This document shows positions 4,386 to 32,517 of a DNA stretch of 32,805 nt, in pieces. Within the stretch, counting starts at the first letter, position 1. Every line of letters starts with the position of its first letter. The notes under the pieces were generated by a model that was not told the origin of the DNA, ran no database searches, and saw only the letters and a list, made by a program, of their open reading frames with translations. The translations under genes and the position numbers were made by a program. Source of the stretch: Octopus bimaculoides (taxonomy: Eukaryota); NCBI RefSeq assembly GCF_001194135.2, contig NC_068983.1:69375636-69408440 (forward strand), written 5' to 3'.

Positions 4386-5028
4386 NNNNNNNNNNNNNNN
4401 NNNNNNNNNNNNNNNNNNNNNNNNNNNNNNNNNNNNNNNNNNNNNNNNNNNNNNNNNNNNNNNNNNNNNNNNNNNNNNNNNNNNNNNNNNNNNNNNNNNN
4501 NNNNNNNNNNNNNNNNNNNNNNNNNNNNNNNNNNNNNNNNNNNNNNNNNNNNNNNNNNNNNNNNNNNNNNNNNNNNNNNNNNNNNNNNNNNNNNNNNNNN
4601 NNNNNNNNNNNNNNNNNNNNNNNNNNNNNNNNNNNNNNNNNNNNNNNNNNNNNNNNNNCATATATATATATACATCTGAAAAATTACTTGGCTCACAACG
4701 ATTGTTTAGCTGTGTTTTCTAAGAAAGCATTGCGTTACATAACGCAGTGCACCGAGAGTTATGACTATGAATGAGAATCTACACTCAGATTATAAAATCT
4801 GTTGTCATAACGTTGTTGACTGTGTTTCCTCGTCCACTGGATCATTAAACCGCCATTCACAACTGTTCCCTGTCCATACTTCAACGGCGATTCATAAGTA
4901 ACGTGATCTCTTGTTGCTCGGGACAATGTGAAGGATTCATTTGACATACTAGTAAAAGAAACCAAATCTTACTCAAACCACATTATATTAAATCATTGTG
5001 TTCTCAGCCACTAGTTTCTTAAACCAGC

Positions 5029-5388
5029 TGTAGTAACGCTGTGCGCATGCGTAGTCTCACGCATGCGTGCAATTCAACAACCAAGCTTTCCCGCTTCATT
5101 CTGTCTCTTTCTTGCTGGCCAGCGATTGAGCAAGGACGTGTTTAGCTGTCTCTCTCCATCTTTCGAACTTACGCTAGACGGCTCGCTCACATCTACATAC
5201 CGTGTCACATTCACCATATAACACACACAGAAGACGTCTCAACAAACAAGAGCTAAAGATATACATTTACCACCATGAATAAATGTTGTTGTTGTTGATA
5301 GTCTGGAGTTCAGCGTTCCGTTCACTTCTAATTTTATATAGGAAAGTCAGGTGTGCATCTAATGATGTATAACCCACTTTCCACTATA
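5029..5388 (+). repeat. 5' LTR (360 bp)
   Basis: TG start, hairpin GCATGCGT-agtctc-ACGCATGC near the start, AATAAA at 5278-5283, ends CCACTATA. Confidence 0.85.
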
Positions 5389-5389
5389 G

Positions 5390-5420
5390 TGGTGACCCTC
5401 CGACGTGATTCAAACACGCA
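5390..5420 (+). promoter_or_regulatory. tRNA-Trp primer-binding site 1 (extended)
   Basis: TGGTGACCCtcCGACGTGAT matches the canonical tRNA-Trp PBS TGGTGACCCCGACGTGAT with a 2-nt insertion. It continues TCAAACACGCA, matching the complement of the tRNA-Trp T-arm (T[T/C]GAACACGCA). Confidence 0.85.
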
Positions 5421-5451
5421 GGTGAGCTACAATAACCACTTTCCACTAAAG

Positions 5452-5465
5452 TGGTGACCCCGACT
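5452..5465 (+). promoter_or_regulatory. tRNA-Trp primer-binding site 2
   Basis: TGGTGACCCCGAC (13/13 match to the Trp PBS), preceded by a copy of the LTR end CCACTTTCCACTAAA + G. Confidence 0.8.
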
Positions 5466-5509
5466 AAGAAACAAGCACGGCCATGGATTCTGGACTACCA
5501 ACCTATAAC

Positions 5510-5523
5510 TGGTGAACCCGACT
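5510..5523 (+). promoter_or_regulatory. tRNA-Trp primer-binding site 3
   Basis: TGGTGAACCCGAC (12/13). It begins a 50-nt unit that is 41/50 identical to the unit starting at PBS 2. Confidence 0.7.
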
Positions 5524-6254
5524 AAAGAACAAATGCGGCCATGGAGACTGAACTACCAAGCAACGATGACCACCAACATCTCCAACCATAGTCAACACGA
5601 CTTACTATGTACACCAAACTAAACCACCGCGGCAAATCTCTCTCTTTGATTCTGTTAGGTGACTTAGCTTCACCACGATAATAAACAGACAATTGTGTAC
5701 TCAAGAACTTGGTTTAAAAATCTCACCTGTACTGACTTTCTATCTGCTGTAAATATCTCACATACATATAGACGGCCTGTCTTTTATTATGTTCTTATAT
5801 GTCGCATTCACACTCTCACATACACATACATCTTTTATGCCACACTAAATATCTCTTGTTATTCATTTTATACGGTTGTGTTTATCATTTTCTATCGTCT
5901 CCCTTTTCTGGCCATATGTTATCGTAGTATAACATATCATGTATATCATCTTTGATATATTATTTTGTGTTCGACCGTGTGACACGTTTAAATAAAAGGA
6001 GTCCTCTGTTTTTCCATTCGTCACCATTTCTCCTTGTCGTCACTGTAAAACTGGACATCATTACGACCGTCAACACCATTACCACCGTCAACACCATTAC
6101 CACCACACATACAGAACACAGCTATATTACAGTTCCTGCACCGACGTCTTCTCTATCAATGTACTGTCTACCACAATGTCGTGCGCCAACAACCCCACCA
6201 CCAGGAACACACCAGATCAACACACTCGGTTTTATCTTCACTGTGGAGTGGAAT

Positions 6255-6919
6255 NNNNNNNNNNNNNNNNNNNNNNNNNNNNNNNNNNNNNNNNNNNNNN
6301 NNNNNNNNNNNNNNNNNNNNNNNNNNNNNNNNNNNNNNNNNNNNNNNNNNNNNNNNNNNNNNNNNNNNNNNNNNNNNNNNNNNNNNNNNNNNNNNNNNNN
6401 NNNNNNNNNNNNNNNNNNNNNNNNNNNNNNNNNNNNNNNNNNNNNNNNNNNNNNNNNNNNNNNNNNNNNNNNNNNNNNNNNNNNNNNNNNNNNNNNNNNN
6501 NNNNNNNNNNNNNNNNNNNNNNNNNNNNNNNNNNNNNNNNNNNNNNNNNNNNNNNNNNNNNNNNNNNNNNNNNNNNNNNNNNNNNNNNNNNNNNNNNNNN
6601 NNNNNNNNNNNNNNNNNNNNNNNNNNNNNNNNNNNNNNNNNNNNNNNNNNNNNNNNNNNNNNNNNNNNNNNNNNNNNNNNNNNNNNNNNNNNNNNNNNNN
6701 NNNNNNNNNNNNNNNNNNNNNNNNNNNNNNNNNNNNNNNNNNNNNNNNNNNNNNNNNNNNNNNNNNNNNNNNNNNNNNNNNNNNNNNNNNNNNNNNNNNN
6801 NNNNNNNNNNNNNNNNNNNNNNNNNNNNNNNNNNNNNNNNNNNNNNNNNNNNNNNNNNNNNNNNNNNNNNNNNNNNNNNNNNNNNNNNNNNNNNNNNNNN
6901 NNNNNNNNNNNNNNNNNNN
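6255..6919. other. Assembly gap inside the LTR element
   Basis: 665 N. Only about 24 bp of the 3' LTR start is needed to fill it. Confidence 0.95.
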
Positions 6920-7255
6920 AGTCTCACGCATACGTGCAATTCAACAACCAAGCTTTCCCGCTTCATTCTGTCTCTTTCTTGCTGGCCAGTGATTGAGCAA
7001 GGACGTGTTTAGCTGTCTCTCTCCATCTTTCGAACTTACGCTAGACGGCTCGCTCACATCTACATACCGTGTCACATTCACCATATAACACACACAGAAG
7101 ACGTCTCAACAAACAAGAGCTAAAGATATATATTTACCACCATGAATAAATGTTGTTGTTGTTGATAGTCTGGAGTTCAGCGTTCCGTTAATTCTTAATT
7201 TTATATAGGAAAGTCAGGTATACATCTAATGATGTATAACCCACTTTCCACTAAA
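6920..7255 (+). repeat. 3' LTR (first ~24 bp lost in gap)
   Basis: Near-identical to 5053-5388; ends CCACTAAA followed by the TSD CAGC. Confidence 0.85.
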
Positions 7256-8378
7256 CAGCCATTCTTAACTGTTCCTAAGCTATATTTCCGCAACGGAGCA
7301 TATGATTCAAAATATATTTTTCCTCCTCGCCAACGAAGAGGTCTTCTCAACAGTCAGGTGACCGATGAGAAATATTAACCAAATCTCTTTCAACTCTTGT
7401 TATTTCATTGTGAATTTTCTCACTTGTCGGGTCATTAGAGCTGCCATGCTTAAAGTCTTACACAAAGCGAACACAATGGACAATGTAGGTCTTACATACA
7501 ACTAACGGCATGGTCATGCTGGAAAACTTCTCATCATAAGGTGACTCAGTCAGGTTTGACTGGGGTGAAACAACAACATTTGTACTTAGTGTCAATACAA
7601 ATTACCATGTCTGTTGTTTTTAGCATATATTAGTTTTGATTAAGATGTATGACCGAAGGCGCTCCAGTCGTAGTCATTCTGTTAAATGTGTATGAAGAGT
7701 GCGTTCAAGTCTTGAGAGAAAACTGACAGTTGTATCAATGACAGACCGAGAGACCACGTAGAGGTTCCTTCGTTGATTTGCTGTTACGTTTTGTAATTGT
7801 GTAATCTAAATACACTACTTTATAGGATTGAAACATTACTCTATATCGTCTTTATTTACCAAAAATTTCAATTGGCTTATATTATTCGAATCAGCTACCC
7901 CACTTTTAAATTTTAAACACATCCCAGGAAACAAGAATAGCTGCATGATTATTCTTTGTTAACCCAAGTTTTCCAACTTACCTTTTATTACATGTGTGAA
8001 CGCCTACCATATGTGAATTTAGCGGAACATTACCTCGAATTACATTGTCTCAACTTTATTGCACGTATTACTATACGTGAAATAAAGTTGTATAGTCTTA
8101 AGTGCATGAGAAATGTAACTTATCCTGGAGAGGACGTGTATCTACCACAGGCAACATGCCCAGCTGATCTGGTGATACTTTTCCTACCAAGAGGAAGATG
8201 AGCTGAAGCAATGTAAAACAAAATATTCTTCCCAAATACGCAATGGAATCGCTCTGTTGTGGATTTGAAGCCTATAGCAATCAGCTAATCGTCTAATATC
8301 ATATCCACTCGATAGTCTTGCTTCTAACATTTTGCGTGGTCCTCAGGTAAATGCTTATTATTTGCTTCTTGTTCTAAT

Positions 8379-8715
8379 AGGCGCACGAGTGGCTGTGTGG
8401 TAAGAAGTTTGCTTCCGGATTCAGTTCCACTGTGTGGCCCCCTGGGCAAGTGCCTTCTACTATAGACTCGGGCCAACCAAAACCTTGTGAGTGGATTTGG
8501 TAGACGGAAACTGAAAGAAACCCGTCGTGTATATATATATATATATATGTATATGTTTGTGTGTCTGAGCTAGTCCCTTCACCAGCGCTTGACAACCGAC
8601 GATATTGGTGTGGTTACGTCCCCGTAACATAGCGGTTCGGCAAAATAAACCGATAGGATAAGTACTAGGCTTACAAAGAATAAGTCCTAGGGTCGATTTA
8701 CTTCATTGAAGGCGG
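8379..8715 (+). mobile_element. tRNA-derived SINE (family A) with internal microsatellite
   Basis: A-box-like GTGGCTGTGTGGTAAG, B-box-like GGATTCAGTTCC (short deletion between them), CTGGGCAAGT core, internal (TA)/(TG) run at about 8528-8566. The 3' half is homologous to 26285-26503. Confidence 0.75.
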
Positions 8716-13165: not shown

Positions 13166-13383
13166 TATGTCTTTATTGCCCACAGGGGGCTAAACAAAGA
13201 CAGACAAAGGGATTAAGTCGATTACGTCGACCCAAATGCGTAACTGGTACTTATTTAATCGACCCCGAAAGGATGAAAGGCAAAGTCAACCTCGGCGTAA
13301 TTTGAACTCAGAACGTAACGACAGACGAAATACCGCTAAGTATTTCGCTCAGTGCTAACGATTCTGCCAGCCCGCCGCTATAT
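13166..13383 (-). mobile_element. Full-length tRNA-derived SINE (family B, Tx1-type tail) with 16-bp TSD
   Basis: Head GCGGCGGGCTGGCAGAATCGTTAGC (A box), GAGTTCAAATTAC (B box), tail GCCCCCTGTGGGCAATAAAGA. TSD CTTTGTAAATTATATG at 13150-13165 and 13384-13399. Confidence 0.85.
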
Positions 13384-18716: not shown

Positions 18717-18912
18717 AATATTAATTTCAATTTTTGTCACAAGGCCAGCAATTTTGGGTAAGGGGATAAGTTGATTACATCAACCTCAGTATTCCAGCTT
18801 GTACTTATTTTATCGGCCCCGAAAGAATGAAAGGCAAAGTCGACCCCGGTGGCATTTGAACTTAGTGCTTAAAGTAGGAAGAAATTCCGCTAAACATTTT
18901 CCCCACTGCTTT
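18717..18912 (-). mobile_element. SINE family B, alternative-tail copy (head truncated)
   Basis: Body matches 13166-13383; the tail is instead AAAATTGCTGGCCTTGTGACAAAAATTGAAATTAATATT. Confidence 0.75.
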
Positions 18913-19126
18913 TTAATATTGGTTTCAAGTTTTGGCTTAAGGTCAGGAATTTTGGGGGAGGGTGCTAGTCGATTACATCGACCCCAGTGTTCAACTGGTA
19001 CTTAATTTATCGATCTCCGAAAGGATGAAAAGCAAAGTTGATCTCGGCGGAATTTGAATCCAGAACGTGCAGACAGATGAAAACGCTAAGCATTTTCCCC
19101 AGCGTGCTAACGGTTCTACCAGCTCC
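18913..19126 (-). mobile_element. SINE family B, alternative-tail copy, head-to-tail with the previous copy
   Basis: Head GGAGCTGGTAGAACCGTTAGCACG, same body, tail CCCCCAAAATTCCTGACCTTAAGCCAAAACTTGAAACCAATATT. TTAATATTG occurs at both 18913-18921 and 19127-19135. Confidence 0.75.
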
Positions 19127-23560: not shown

Positions 23561-23792
23561 GAAAATTCCAATGAACAAACTTTGAGTCTAGGTTAGAAAG
23601 CGGCTCTTTCTCTATTGGTAAGAAATCTTGAAATGAAACTGAATAATGACATACATACATACATACATACATACAAAAATACCCAGTTGATGTTGAAATT
23701 CCAATGAAGGAGCCTTGGATCTAATGTTAGAAACAGGCTCTTTCTCTATTGCTAAGAAATCTTGAAATCAATCTGAATAATGACATACATAC
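23561..23792 (+). repeat. Two tandem copies of a ~90-bp LINE/SINE-like 3' end, each followed by (CATA)n
   Basis: AAATTCCAATGAA...GGCTCTTTCTCTATTG[G/C]TAAGAAATCTTGAAAT...CTGAATAATGA-CATACATAC at 23561-23674 and about 23695-23792. Stem GAAGGAGCC/GGCTCTTTC in copy 2. Confidence 0.7.
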
Positions 23793-24496
23793 TAACAACA
23801 GCATACTCAGAGACGCGCTTTAACTCATATGCACACTCAAACACTCCTAAATAGCTCATATACTAATTCACATAAACACACACATGTACATAAAGTGATG
23901 ACAAATTAGTACAACTAAATATTCTTTTATTACTATTTACAACAGTAATACTAACCTTATTACTGTAATATACAAAATATTATCACTCTGCCTTCCTTAG
24001 TCACTTTACCGCCCCTGCATACCGATTTATGTAACTTTCCACACCCATCTCACAGCACCCTGTTGGGAATTATGTACAAATGAGATGCTCATTTCTCTGT
24101 CTCTGTCTCTGTCTCCCTCTCGCTATCTCTCATTCTCTCTTTTTCTCACCCACTCTCTCTTTAACTCTTTCTNNNNNNNNNNNNNNNNNNNNNNNNNNNN
24201 NNNNNNNNNNNNNNNNNNNNNNNNNNNNNNNNNNNNNNNNNNNNNNNNNNNNNNNNNNNNNNNNNNNNNNNNTTAGGTAGGTAGATAGCTAGCTAGATAG
24301 ATATAGATAAAAATATAGATTTAGTTCTATATGTATTGTATATGCATGTGTATATATGTACATGTGTGTACATACATGTAAATGTATGTATATGTATGTA
24401 CATGTGTGTGTCATTTATATAGGCTTAATAAACATGTACTCAACAAAAACTGTTGCCTAATTCATCACTTAGAATGTAAAATTTTGATTACAACCC

Positions 24497-26186: not shown

Positions 26187-26503
26187 AAGCCTGTCGTATA
26201 TATATATCTATATCTATATATGTGTGTGTGTATGTATGTGTGTGTGTATGTGTGTGTGTGTATATGTGTGTGTGTATTGTGTCAGTGTCTGTGTTTGTCC
26301 CCCAACCACGTCATGGTTTGACAACCGATGCTGGTATGTTATTCTCCCCTGAACTTAGCGGTTCGGGAAAAGTCTTCGATAGAATAAGTACTAGGCTTTC
26401 ATAAAATAAATCCTAAGGAAGATTTCTTCAGCTAACACCCTTTGAGGAGGTGCTCCAGCATGGCAACCGTCAAATGACTAAGACAAGTAAAAGAATAATA
26501 GAA
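26187..26503 (+). mobile_element. 5'-truncated SINE family A copy with expanded internal microsatellite
   Basis: AAGCCTGTCG + (TA/TG)n, then GTGTCTGTGTTTGTCCCC...GACAACCGATGCTGG...TAGAATAAGTACTAGGCTT...GGTGCTCCAGCATGGC...CAAGTAAAAGAATA, homologous to 8515-8715. Confidence 0.7.
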
Positions 26504-29055: not shown

Positions 29056-29258
29056 GTATTGATTTCAAATTTTTGCACAAGGCCAGTAATTTCACGGTTG
29101 GGAGAAGTTGAAATTCGACCCCTGTGCTGAGCTGACACTTATTTTATTGACCACGAAAGGATGAATGGCATAGTTGACCTCAGCGGAATTTGAACTCAGA
29201 ACGTAAAGACAGTCGAAAAGCCGCAAAGCACCTTGCCTGGCGTGCTAACTCTTCTGTC
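29056..29258 (-). mobile_element. SINE family B, alternative-tail copy
   Basis: Same body and GGCCTTGTGCAAAAATTTGAAATCAATAC tail as 18717-19126. Confidence 0.7.
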
Positions 29259-31657: not shown

Positions 31658-32517
31658 TGTGATCTGATCAATAAGTACCCGAACTATTGCCATATTAACG
31701 AGGCTAAAGCAAGCAGAGTAAAGCTGCTCGGCACAGATGGACCTTGAACTTTGCTGTGCATGCGCACTAAGCTTTAACGTTCTAGCTCAGTTCCGCTGTT
31801 TACAGCAGTGCTTGGAAATAACGTGTGTAAGGTGTGTCCGTCGCATTGACCATGGCAGAGAAAGTTGAGCAGAGAATCTGCATCAAATTTTGTCAAAAGC
31901 TTGGCGACACCTGCTCAGTGGCCTACGCAATGTTTTCTAAGTTTTCATCGTCTTCGACAGAATCAAGGGGATTGTGTGCAACTGAAACCTGGGTGTCTTT
32001 TTGGTCAGCTGAAACTTGGCATACACGCGTCCAATACCCAAATCTTCAGTGATAATGGATTGAACTGAACCATAACTAATCTGCACATCCTCTGATGACT
32101 CATGGATGGTGATTCTACGATTCCCCCTCGCAGCTACACGCACATCTGTAATGTTTTTCTCAGTTCTGCTAGCTGCAGGTCTCCCAGAATGTTCGTCACT
32201 ATCGTCATTTTTTCGACCATTCTGGAAATGTCTGAACCACTCGTACACTTGTGTGCGACCCACACACTCCTCTTCATTCACTTTCTGCAACTTTGTGTTG
32301 GCCTCTGAGCAGGTATCGCCCTGACAACTTTCTGGCCAATGCGACGATCACACGTTACACACGTTTTTTCGAATCACTGCTGTGAACAGAGGAGGTGAGC
32401 AACAACGTTAAAACTTAGTGCATATGCACAATAGCGGTCAAGATCAATCGGCTTATCTCTGCATGCTGTAGTGTCGTTACTATAGCAACAGTCCGGATAC
32501 TTATTGATTAGACCTCG
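31658..32517. mobile_element. Mariner (DD34D-type N-terminus) derivative made of two inward-facing 5' ends
   Basis: TA-flanked 28-bp TIRs (22/28). Left arm: 5' UTR + MAEKVEQRICIKFCQKLGDTCSVAYA. Right arm on (-): homologous 5' UTR + GDTCSEANTKLQKV...TQVYEWF..F..GR...D..SGRP...RRITI..(HTH)...DSVEDDEN. The arms join at the microhomology AAGTTT (31939-31944). No catalytic domain. Confidence 0.85.

What the first reader, a model, noticed from the sequence alone, without database searches (positions are those of the whole stretch)
5381..5559. Array of three tRNA-Trp primer-binding sites, each with an LTR-end-like prefix, inside one non-coding LTR element
Seen: PBS-like motifs start at 5390, 5452 and 5510 (spacing 62 and 58 bp). 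PBS 2 is preceded by CCACTTTCCACTAAA (5436-5450), identical to the end of the 3' LTR, and upstream by CAGGTG as in U5. PBS 3 is preceded by CTATA-AC. Units 2 and 3 align ungapped at 41/50 and each carries GCCATGG starting a short gag-like start (MDSGLPT vs METELPS). Known: LTR retroelements have one PBS directly after the 5' LTR. Inference: the leader is a chain of U5-PBS-leader junctions taken from different related elements by aberrant strand transfers at the PBS. This would be a record of successive template switches, or a multi-primer design helping a parasite compete for helper RT and tRNA.
Basis: partly seen in the sequence, partly recalled or inferred. Interest (0 to 1): 0.8.

Follow-up and report, generated by a model that had tools for sequence, protein, structure and literature searches.

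The report
Three tRNA-Trp primer sites, one retrotransposon leader
A short, non-coding CsRn1-like LTR retrotransposon has three tRNA-Trp primer-site motifs after its 5' LTR, which look like inherited scars of faulty reverse transcription and a small duplication rather than a designed multi-primer device.

Summary
TGGTGA motifs start at 5390, 5452 and 5510, directly after a 360-bp 5' LTR (5029-5388).

The three units are not equivalent.
- Unit 1 (5390-5420) copies 29 nt of the tRNA-Trp 3' end, 27/29 matched with a 2-nt insertion. That reaches far beyond a normal 18-nt site, to about tRNA position 48.
- It joins, through a CA microhomology, a diverged partial copy of the last ~32 nt of U5 (5419-5450), followed by a perfect 13-nt site (unit 2).
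- Units 2 and 3 are a 58-bp tandem duplication of site, leader and ATG (41/50 identical).

Best reading: primer over-extension during plus-strand strong-stop synthesis, re-entry into U5, then a separate duplication.

The units have diverged far more than the two LTRs (p = 2e-4), so the array was inherited from the parent element. The 3' LTR ends exactly where unit 1's prefix ends, so only site 1 primed the last cycle.

The 4-bp target duplication, TGT..ATA/AAA LTR ends and tRNA-Trp site fit the CsRn1 clade. A 665-N gap lies inside the element.

No other copy could be retrieved: the run finder was closed and all other searches were empty. Origin from several subfamilies and a multi-primer function remain untested. 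Interest is moderate.

The parts
5025..5028 (+). 5' target-site duplication CAGC
   Evidence: Identical to 7256-7259. A 4-bp duplication is typical of the CsRn1 clade (PMC2582038).
5029..5388 (+). 5' LTR, 360 bp, TGTAGT...CCACTATA. AATAAA at 5278. U5 runs from about 5300 to 5388.
   Evidence: 336 nt align to 6920-7255 with 10 mismatches and no indels. Termini are TGT..ATA, as described for CsRn1-like elements. The R/U5 limits are inferred from the AATAAA position only.
5389..5389 (+). 1-nt spacer G between the LTR and primer site 1
   Evidence: Read from the sequence.
5390..5420 (+). Unit 1: primer-binding site plus contiguous copy of tRNA-Trp positions 76 to about 48. It has a 2-nt insertion (CCCTCC for CCCC) and 2 T-loop mismatches.
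   Evidence: Alignment 27/29. The extension beats 5000/5000 shuffles. Predicted duplex with the tRNA 3' 33 nt is -46.5 kcal/mol, against -36.6 for a canonical 18-mer.
5419..5450 (+). U5': diverged partial copy of the last ~40 nt of U5 (CAGGTG...ATAACCACTTTCCACTAAA). Its first CA overlaps the end of the tRNA copy (microhomology).
   Evidence: Against U5 5349-5389: 29 matches, 2 mismatches, 3-4 indels. The last 15 nt are identical to the 3' LTR end.
5451..5451 (+). 1-nt spacer G before primer site 2
   Evidence: Read from the sequence.
5452..5464 (+). Unit 2 primer-binding site, 13/13 complementary to the tRNA-Trp 3' end
   Evidence: There is no tRNA similarity beyond 13 nt (p = 0.36).
5465..5501 (+). 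Leader copy A with GCCATGG (ATG at 5483). Short ORF MDSGLPTYNW*.
5502..5509 (+). Junction CCTATAAC between the two 58-bp repeat units, weakly like the LTR tip (CTATA)
   Evidence: It has no counterpart after unit 3.
5510..5522 (+). Unit 3 primer-binding site, 12/13 (TGGTGAACCCGAC)
   Evidence: There is no tRNA similarity beyond 13 nt (p = 0.64).
5523..5559 (+). Leader copy B with GCCATGG (ATG at 5541). Short ORF METELPSNDDHQHLQP*.
5560..6254 (+). Visible internal region with no coding capacity. Contains an 18-bp x 2.8 tandem repeat at 6055-6104.
   Evidence: Only short ORFs in six frames. No Pfam family at E <= 1 in the three forward frames. Tandem repeat.
6255..6919 (.). Assembly gap (665 N) inside the element
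   Evidence: Gap lengths in the window range from 100 to 750, so they look like size estimates.
6920..7255 (+). Visible part of the 3' LTR, ending ...CCACTAAA
7256..7259 (+). 3' target-site duplication CAGC

Best explanation
The region is the 5' leader of one insertion of a short (~2.2 kb), apparently non-autonomous LTR retrotransposon with the non-coding hallmarks of the CsRn1 clade of Ty3/Gypsy. The three primer-site motifs are inherited scars of two separate events in the family's history.

Event A (inferred). [quoted passage not shown] It copied the tRNA-Trp primer to about position 48, at the edge of the variable loop. The nascent 3' end ...ACACGCA then switched template, through a CA microhomology, back to TCA|GGTG about 40 nt before the end of U5. 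It re-copied the U5 end and the primer's 3' end, and then completed normal plus-strand transfer. The product is LTR-G-[29-nt tRNA copy]-[partial U5]-G-[site 2]-leader.

Event B (shown as a repeat; mechanism open). A 58-bp tandem duplication covers site, leader and start codon, and perhaps the last 6 nt of U5. It could arise by reverse-transcriptase template switching or by DNA slippage in a master copy.

The array was already present in the parent RNA. In the cycle that made this copy, minus-strand synthesis was primed at site 1. Sites 2 and 3 are then leader passengers that add two short upstream ORFs. Site 2 keeps a perfect 13-nt match and an intact LTR-tip sequence, so it could occasionally prime. 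That would give LTRs 62 bp longer.
For: Shown:
- Unit 1 matches 27/29 nt of the tRNA-Trp 3' end. The part beyond the first 9 nt beats 5000/5000 shuffles. The tails of units 2 and 3 have no tRNA similarity.
- The sequence right after the tRNA copy is homologous to the U5 end: CAGGTG, then ATAACC(C)ACTTTCCACTA[A/T]AG, then TGGTGACCC. The 15/15 identity to the 3' LTR tip is.
- The junction ...ACACGCA|GGTGAGC compared with U5 ...AAAGTCA|GGTGTGC shares CA.
- Units 2 and 3 differ at 9/50 positions. The LTR pair differs at 10/336 with no indels (Fisher p = 1.7e-4). U5 and U5' differ by 3-4 indels. The duplications therefore predate this insertion.
- The 3' LTR ends at ...CCACTAAA, then the duplicated target CAGC. 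That is the boundary set by site 1. By the established mechanism, the 3' end of U5 is the start point of minus-strand synthesis.
- Predicted duplex energies with the tRNA 3' end are -46.5 kcal/mol for site 1, -36.7 for site 2 and -33.4 for site 3.

From the literature:
- Plus-strand strong-stop DNA normally ends before m1A58. Over-extended products exist. Lentiviruses and spumaviruses carry a 'primer over-extension sequence' next to the primer site (PMC13191261; the Muthuswami 2002 reference was seen).
- The CsRn1_Cv1 element of Calliphora has a single site whose complementarity to tRNA-Trp also runs to 21/25 nt.
- CsRn1 hallmarks met here: tRNA-Trp site, 4-bp target duplication, TGT..ATA/AAA termini.
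Against: - Only one copy was seen. No other family member or autonomous partner could be retrieved, so inheritance is inferred from divergence alone.
- The host's own tRNA-Trp is unknown. The 2 T-loop mismatches and the 2-nt insertion in unit 1 are unexplained. They could be later mutation or a host-specific T loop.
- U5' differs from U5 by several indels.
- A 2-nt microhomology is weak evidence on its own.
- The extended complementarity in the Calliphora element suggests long tRNA-Trp matches may be a standing feature of the clade rather than a single accident.
- The gap inside the element means the two LTRs sit on different contigs. Their pairing rests on the 4-bp target duplication.
Confidence: 0.55

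Rival explanations
1. The leader is a chain of U5-site-leader junctions captured from different related elements by successive strand transfers at the primer-binding site between co-packaged RNAs of different subfamilies.
For: - U5' keeps the LTR tip, 15/15 identical to the 3' LTR end. Its upstream part differs from this element's U5 by 3-4 indels, as expected if it came from a related subfamily with a conserved integrase-recognition end.
- Unit 1 and units 2/3 have different sequence after the site.
Against: - Units 2 and 3 are simple paralogues of each other (41/50). They are not junctions of distinct elements.
- Unit 3's LTR-like prefix is only 5-6 nt.
- The unit 1/2 junction lies at the end of a tRNA copy, not at a site boundary.
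- No second subfamily was seen. Blast of the element against the rest of the window found nothing, and all external searches were empty.
Confidence: 0.15
2. Adaptive multi-primer leader. Three tRNA-Trp sites are kept by selection. They might help a non-autonomous element capture primer and helper reverse transcriptase, allow alternative initiation, or soak up tRNA-derived small RNAs that target primer-binding sites.
For: - The array went through at least one retrotransposition cycle.
- Site 2 is a perfect 13-mer with an intact LTR-tip prefix.
- All three sites are predicted to form stable duplexes with the tRNA 3' end.
Against: - The 3' LTR boundary shows that only site 1 primed the last cycle.
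- Site 3 has an internal mismatch and a poor integrase-end prefix.
- Site 1 has a 2-nt insertion.
- From my own knowledge of engineered two-site retroviral vectors (Voronin and Pathak 2004; I saw only the citation), dual initiation causes loss of the sequence between the sites. Arrays should therefore be unstable rather than favoured.
- There is no conservation evidence.
Confidence: 0.1
3. DNA-level rearrangement. A second copy inserted, or sat in tandem, next to the first. A later deletion left the last ~32 nt of its U5 plus its site and leader fused to the first copy's extended site.
For: - It would explain why U5' differs from U5.
- The assembly gap could hide further complexity.
Against: - It needs several steps.
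- The deletion end point would have to fall exactly at the end of the tRNA-derived stretch, with a CA overlap.
- The outer LTRs share a target duplication, and the estimated total length is only ~2.2 kb.
- It does not explain the 29-nt tRNA copy.
Confidence: 0.1
4. A local tandem triplication arose in this copy after insertion and diverged in place, or the array is an assembly artefact.
For: Units 2 and 3 are head-to-tail with a 58-bp period. The assembly is a gappy draft.
Against: - The units differ at 18% of positions against 3% for the LTR pair (p = 1.7e-4).
- Unit 1 is structurally different from units 2 and 3.
- Repeats of ~80% identity inside a single contig are not a typical collapse or expansion artefact.
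Confidence: 0.05

Closest known systems
CsRn1-clade Ty3/Gypsy LTR retrotransposons (CsRn1, PwRn1, AgCR1-14, CsRn1_Cv1)
   Same: tRNA-Trp primer-binding site 1 nt after the LTR, a 4-bp target duplication, LTR termini TGT..ATA/AAA, an LTR of ~360 bp, and a short leader with an ATG ~30-45 nt after the site (PMC2582038; PMC3630058 supplement).
   Different: No gag or pol is visible and the estimated length is ~2.2 kb, against 4.2-6.2 kb. There are three site motifs instead of one. The Calliphora element has one.
Primer over-extension sequence of lentiviruses and spumaviruses (Muthuswami et al. 2002, J Mol Biol 315:311; reviewed in PMC13191261)
   Same: Sequence directly downstream of the 18-nt site that is complementary to tRNA nucleotides beyond position 58. 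It reflects, or tolerates, plus-strand strong-stop DNA that runs past m1A58.
   Different: The described over-extension reaches T-loop positions 55 and 54. Here the match runs 11 nt further, through the whole T arm to about position 48. It is followed by a re-copied U5 end rather than by ordinary leader.
Engineered retroviral vectors with two primer-binding sites (Voronin and Pathak 2003 and 2004; the 2004 citation was seen, content from my own knowledge)
   Same: More than one site for the same tRNA in a single leader. Initiation at the downstream site predicts a longer U5.
   Different: Those are laboratory constructs. This is a natural element in which the duplicate carries its own U5 end, and there is evidence only for use of the first site.
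Aberrant retroviral DNA ends and 2-LTR circle junctions carrying primer-site or tRNA-derived insertions (own knowledge, not checked here)
   Same: A U5-site-tRNA sequence continuing into LTR sequence, caused by read-through of the tRNA primer or faulty primer removal.
   Different: Those are dead-end, unintegrated products. Here the product was integrated, transcribed and propagated.
Non-autonomous LTR elements (TRIM, LARD and similar) and tandem repeats in LTR-retrotransposon 5' leaders
   Same: LTRs, a primer site and a non-coding interior, dependent on a helper element. Repeats in the leader are common.
   Different: The repeat unit here is the primer-binding site itself, and in one case it includes a U5 end.

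Membership tests
LTR retrotransposon (structural definition) | Two direct long terminal repeats | tested here: met
   5053-5388 against 6920-7255: 326/336 identical, no indels. The first 24 bp of the 3' LTR lie in the gap.
LTR retrotransposon (structural definition) | Target-site duplication flanking the element | tested here: met
   CAGC at 5025-5028 and 7256-7259. It is only 4 bp, so it is weak evidence on its own.
LTR retrotransposon (structural definition) | tRNA primer-binding site next to the 5' LTR | tested here: met
   TGGTGACCC... starts 1 nt after the LTR end.
LTR retrotransposon (structural definition) | Polypurine tract upstream of the 3' LTR | not testable with these tools
   The position is hidden in the assembly gap 6255-6919.
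CsRn1 clade of Ty3/Gypsy | Primer-binding site complementary to tRNA-Trp | tested here: met
   Clade feature per PMC2582038 and PMC3630058.
CsRn1 clade of Ty3/Gypsy | 4-bp target-site duplication | tested here: met
   clade feature.
CsRn1 clade of Ty3/Gypsy | LTR termini TGT...AAA or TGT...ATA | tested here: met
   5' LTR is TGTAGT...ACTATA and the 3' LTR ends ...ACTAAA. Clade feature.
CsRn1 clade of Ty3/Gypsy | Gag with a CHCC (CX2HX9CX3C) motif, and pol phylogeny | tested here: inconclusive
   No coding sequence in the visible 695 bp of interior. The rest is in the gap. The element appears non-autonomous, so clade membership rests on non-coding hallmarks only.
Primer over-extension sequence | Contiguous complementarity to the primer tRNA beyond nucleotide 58, directly 3' of the site | tested here: met
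   5408-5420 matches tRNA-Trp positions 58 to 48, 11/13.
Primer over-extension sequence | Supports plus-strand transfer of over-extended strong-stop DNA | not testable with these tools
   Needs reverse-transcription intermediates.
Plain tandem repeat array | Head-to-tail copies of one unit | tested here: not met
   Units 2 and 3 qualify (period 58, 44/58). Unit 1 has a different content: a tRNA copy plus partial U5. Tandem Repeats Finder reports no array at 5381-5559, even at minimum score 30.

The most novel reading that the evidence does not exclude
The triple-site leader is a conserved, working feature of a non-autonomous CsRn1-like family. The 29-nt extended site 1 would out-compete the helper element for tRNA-Trp. 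Site 2, with its own intact LTR tip, would act as an alternative initiation site producing a second LTR length class. The extra sites might also act as decoys for tRNA-derived small RNAs that silence LTR elements through their primer-binding sites.
Probability: 0.1. Interest if true: 0.7.

Novelty: new variant of a known kind. Interest (0 to 1): 0.4.

Why it matters
If the reading holds, this leader is a natural, heritable record of two things. So far as I found, they are documented only in retroviral in-vitro systems, mutant cells and dead-end circular DNA. One is read-through of the tRNA primer past m1A58. The other is re-entry of the nascent plus strand into U5.

The array survived at least one further retrotransposition. 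That shows such products can be viable. It gives a concrete route by which primer sites duplicate, leaders grow and U5 boundaries shift.

With the Calliphora element, it also hints that tRNA-Trp-primed CsRn1-like elements commonly carry tRNA complementarity well beyond 18 nt. That is easy to test across genomes.

It does not by itself show a new biological function.

Tried and rejected
Searches for other copies or relatives were all empty:
- Exact-product look-ups of two ORFs of the element and one ORF of unique flank.
- A protein search with a 145-aa read-through frame spanning U5, the array and the leader. It gave 8 word candidates and none scored.
- Exact-pattern scans of viral contigs, and a scan for two sites 35-65 nt apart.
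- Blast of the element against the rest of the window. It found only its own 3' LTR.

Other negative results:
- Rfam at permissive and gathering thresholds gave nothing relevant. ARAGORN found no tRNA gene in the window, so the host tRNA-Trp is unknown.
- Pfam found nothing in the three forward frames of the interior.
- Hidden tRNA similarity after sites 2 and 3 was rejected.
- I considered by eye whether 5421-5435 continues the tRNA copy into the D arm after an internal deletion. About 11 of 27 positions match, so I rejected it in favour of the U5 alignment.
- Clustering of LTR mismatches toward U5 is not significant.
- One literature query on multiple or tandem 'PBS' was swamped by 'phosphate-buffered saline'.
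- No paper in the library combines the site sequence with 'retrotransposon'.
- Voronin and Pathak 2004 is not held in the library.

Full report
**Anatomy**

The window is a very gappy draft assembly, with eleven N runs of 100-750 bases. A direct repeat, 5053-5352 and 6920-7219, marks an LTR pair.

Extending the alignment gives 336 aligned bases with 10 mismatches and no indels. The 5' LTR runs from 5029 to 5388 (360 bp, TGTAGT...CCACTATA). The 3' LTR ends at 7255 (...CCACTAAA). Both are flanked by CAGC, at 5025-5028 and 7256-7259.

A gap of 665 N (6255-6919) lies inside the element. It hides the first 24 bp of the 3' LTR, the polypurine tract and part of the interior. The gap lengths in this window vary, so they look like size estimates. 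The element would then be about 2.2 kb, too short for gag-pol.

The visible 695 bp of interior holds only short ORFs. It has no Pfam match at E <= 1 in the three forward frames.

**The observation**

- TGGTGA motifs start at 5390, 5452 and 5510.
- CCACTTTCCACTAAA at 5436-5450 is identical to the 3' LTR tip.
- CAGGTG is at 5348 and 5419.
- CTATAAC lies before the third motif.
- Units 2 and 3 match 41/50 ungapped (44/58).
- GCCATGG is at 5480 and 5538, opening two short ORFs.

The 13-mer TGGTGACCCCGAC, allowing 2 mismatches, occurs nowhere else in the window. The chance expectation is 0.10.

**What the three units are**

They are not equivalent.

*Unit 1 (5390-5420)* aligns to the reverse complement of the tRNA-Trp 3' end over 29 tRNA nucleotides. 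There are 27 matches, a 2-nt insertion (CCCTCC for CCCC) and two mismatches in the T loop. I checked the tRNA sequence I used against a published human tRNA-Trp (bioRxiv 10.1101/400127). The canonical 18-mer is the primer-binding site listed for avian retroviruses (PMC4635179). The part of the match beyond the first 9 nt beats all 5000 shuffles. So unit 1 is a primer-binding site plus a contiguous copy of the whole T arm, ending at about tRNA position 48.

*The segment after unit 1.* Directly after the tRNA copy, the sequence becomes homologous to the end of U5. It reads CAGGTG, a diverged stretch, then ATAACCACTTTCCACTAAAG, followed by site 2. The join reads ...ACACGCA|GGTGAGC. U5 reads ...AAAGTCA|GGTGTGC, and the tRNA would continue ...ACACGCA|ACC. 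The dinucleotide CA is common to all three.

*Units 2 and 3.* Unit 2 (5452-5464) is a perfect 13-mer and unit 3 (5510-5522) matches 12/13. Their downstream sequences have no similarity to the tRNA (p = 0.36 and 0.64). They are 82% identical to each other over 50 nt, at a 58-bp period.

**Mechanism (inferred)**

In retroviral-type reverse transcription, plus-strand strong-stop DNA copies U3-R-U5 and then the first 18 nt of the tRNA still attached to the minus strand. It stops before m1A58. Over-extended products occur when that block is passed. Lentiviruses and spumaviruses even carry a matching 'primer over-extension sequence' next to the site (PMC13191261; Muthuswami et al. 2002, cited).

A plus strand that copied the tRNA to the variable loop would read exactly U5-G-[unit 1]. 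From memory of the bovine tRNA-Trp modification map, position 47 is dihydrouridine and position 46 is m7G. That would make position 48 a natural stalling point. I could not check this.

A stalled 3' end ...CA, re-pairing at the CA of TCAGGTG about 40 nt back on the same minus-strand template, would re-copy the U5 end and the primer's 3' end. It would then complete normal transfer. This yields the observed order: LTR-G-tRNA copy-partial U5-G-site 2-leader.

The 58-bp repeat of units 2 and 3 is a separate duplication. Its mechanism is open: reverse-transcriptase template switching or DNA slippage in a master copy.

**Age and use**

The LTR pair differs at 10/336 positions with no indels. Units 2 and 3 differ at 9/50 (Fisher p = 1.7e-4). 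U5 and U5' differ by 2 substitutions and 3-4 indels. The duplications are therefore much older than this insertion. The array was present in the parent RNA and survived at least one full retrotransposition.

It predicts that other family members carry the array.

The 3' end of U5 is, by mechanism, the start point of minus-strand synthesis. The 3' LTR ends at the boundary set by site 1 and lacks the 62 or 120 extra bases that priming at site 2 or 3 would add. So site 1 was the site used.

Predicted duplex energies with the tRNA 3' 33 nt agree with that order:

| Site | Energy (kcal/mol) |
|---|---|
| Site 1 | -46.5 |
| Site 2 | -36.7 |
| Site 3 | -33.4 |
| Canonical 18-mer | -36.6 |

Site 2 keeps a perfect core and an intact LTR tip. 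Occasional priming there should give integration-competent DNA with longer LTRs, which is a testable prediction. Site 3 has a poor tip.

**Family**

Papers on CsRn1-like elements give these shared features: a tRNA-Trp site, a 4-bp target duplication, LTR ends TGT..AAA or TGT..ATA, and a CHCC Gag motif (PMC2582038; PMC3630058).

The first three are met here. The Gag test is impossible because no coding sequence is visible. The element works like, and probably derives from, a CsRn1-clade element. Membership is supported only by non-coding hallmarks.

The published CsRn1_Cv1 sequence of Calliphora has a single site with the gag ATG about 46 nt after it. Its complementarity to tRNA-Trp also extends to 21/25 nt. 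Long tRNA matches may therefore be common in this clade. That would make unit 1's extension less of a one-off accident. It would not explain the re-copied U5 end.

**Limits**

- I could not obtain any other copy of this family or its helper.
- Exact-product look-ups, a protein search, three viral scans, two metagenome scans and one prokaryotic genome scan were all empty. The window holds no second copy.
- The host organism and its tRNA-Trp are unknown.
The second is disfavoured by the LTR boundary.

**Verdict**

This is a real and neat structure. It is best read as an inherited fossil of primer over-extension with re-entry into U5, plus a small duplication, in a non-autonomous CsRn1-like element. 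It is a new variant of known processes, resting on a single copy. Interest is moderate.

Noticed in passing
window 5041-5070: Near the start of the LTR (U3) the motif CGCATGCGT occurs twice, 18 bp apart, within GCGCATGCGTAGTCTCACGCATGCGTGC. It resembles the palindromic GCGCATGCGC type of transcription-factor site and may be the element's enhancer or promoter.
   Followed up: no
window 6055-6104: An 18-bp tandem repeat (ACACCATTACCACCGTCA, 2.8 copies, 93% matches) lies in the non-coding interior of the element.
   Followed up: partly
window 5323-5328 vs 7190-7195: Four of the ten LTR-LTR differences fall within 6 bp (CACTTC vs AATTCT). This suggests one complex mutation, or mixing of reads from different copies. 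Overall clustering toward U5 was not significant.
   Followed up: partly
window 8600-8699 and 26326-26425: A pair of 100-bp sequences at 75% identity (family D8). It looks like a dispersed short repeat, perhaps SINE-like. No Rfam match.
   Followed up: no
window 13227-13340, 18781-18894, 18979-19092, 29115-29228: A four-copy dispersed repeat of ~114 bp at 61-81% identity (family D7), unclassified.
   Followed up: no
window 31937-32290 (-): A 117-aa ORF with a weak, sub-threshold match to the HTH domain of Mos1/mariner transposase (PF17906, E = 0.07). Probably a decayed mariner-like fragment.
   Followed up: partly
window 23592-23663 and 23726-23797: Two 72-bp copies at 90% identity, 134 bp apart (family D9).
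   Followed up: no
whole window: Eleven assembly gaps, and very abundant (TA)n, (TG)n, (TATC)n and (ATAC)n microsatellites, several of them bordering gaps. Contig quality around repeats should be treated with care.
   Followed up: partly
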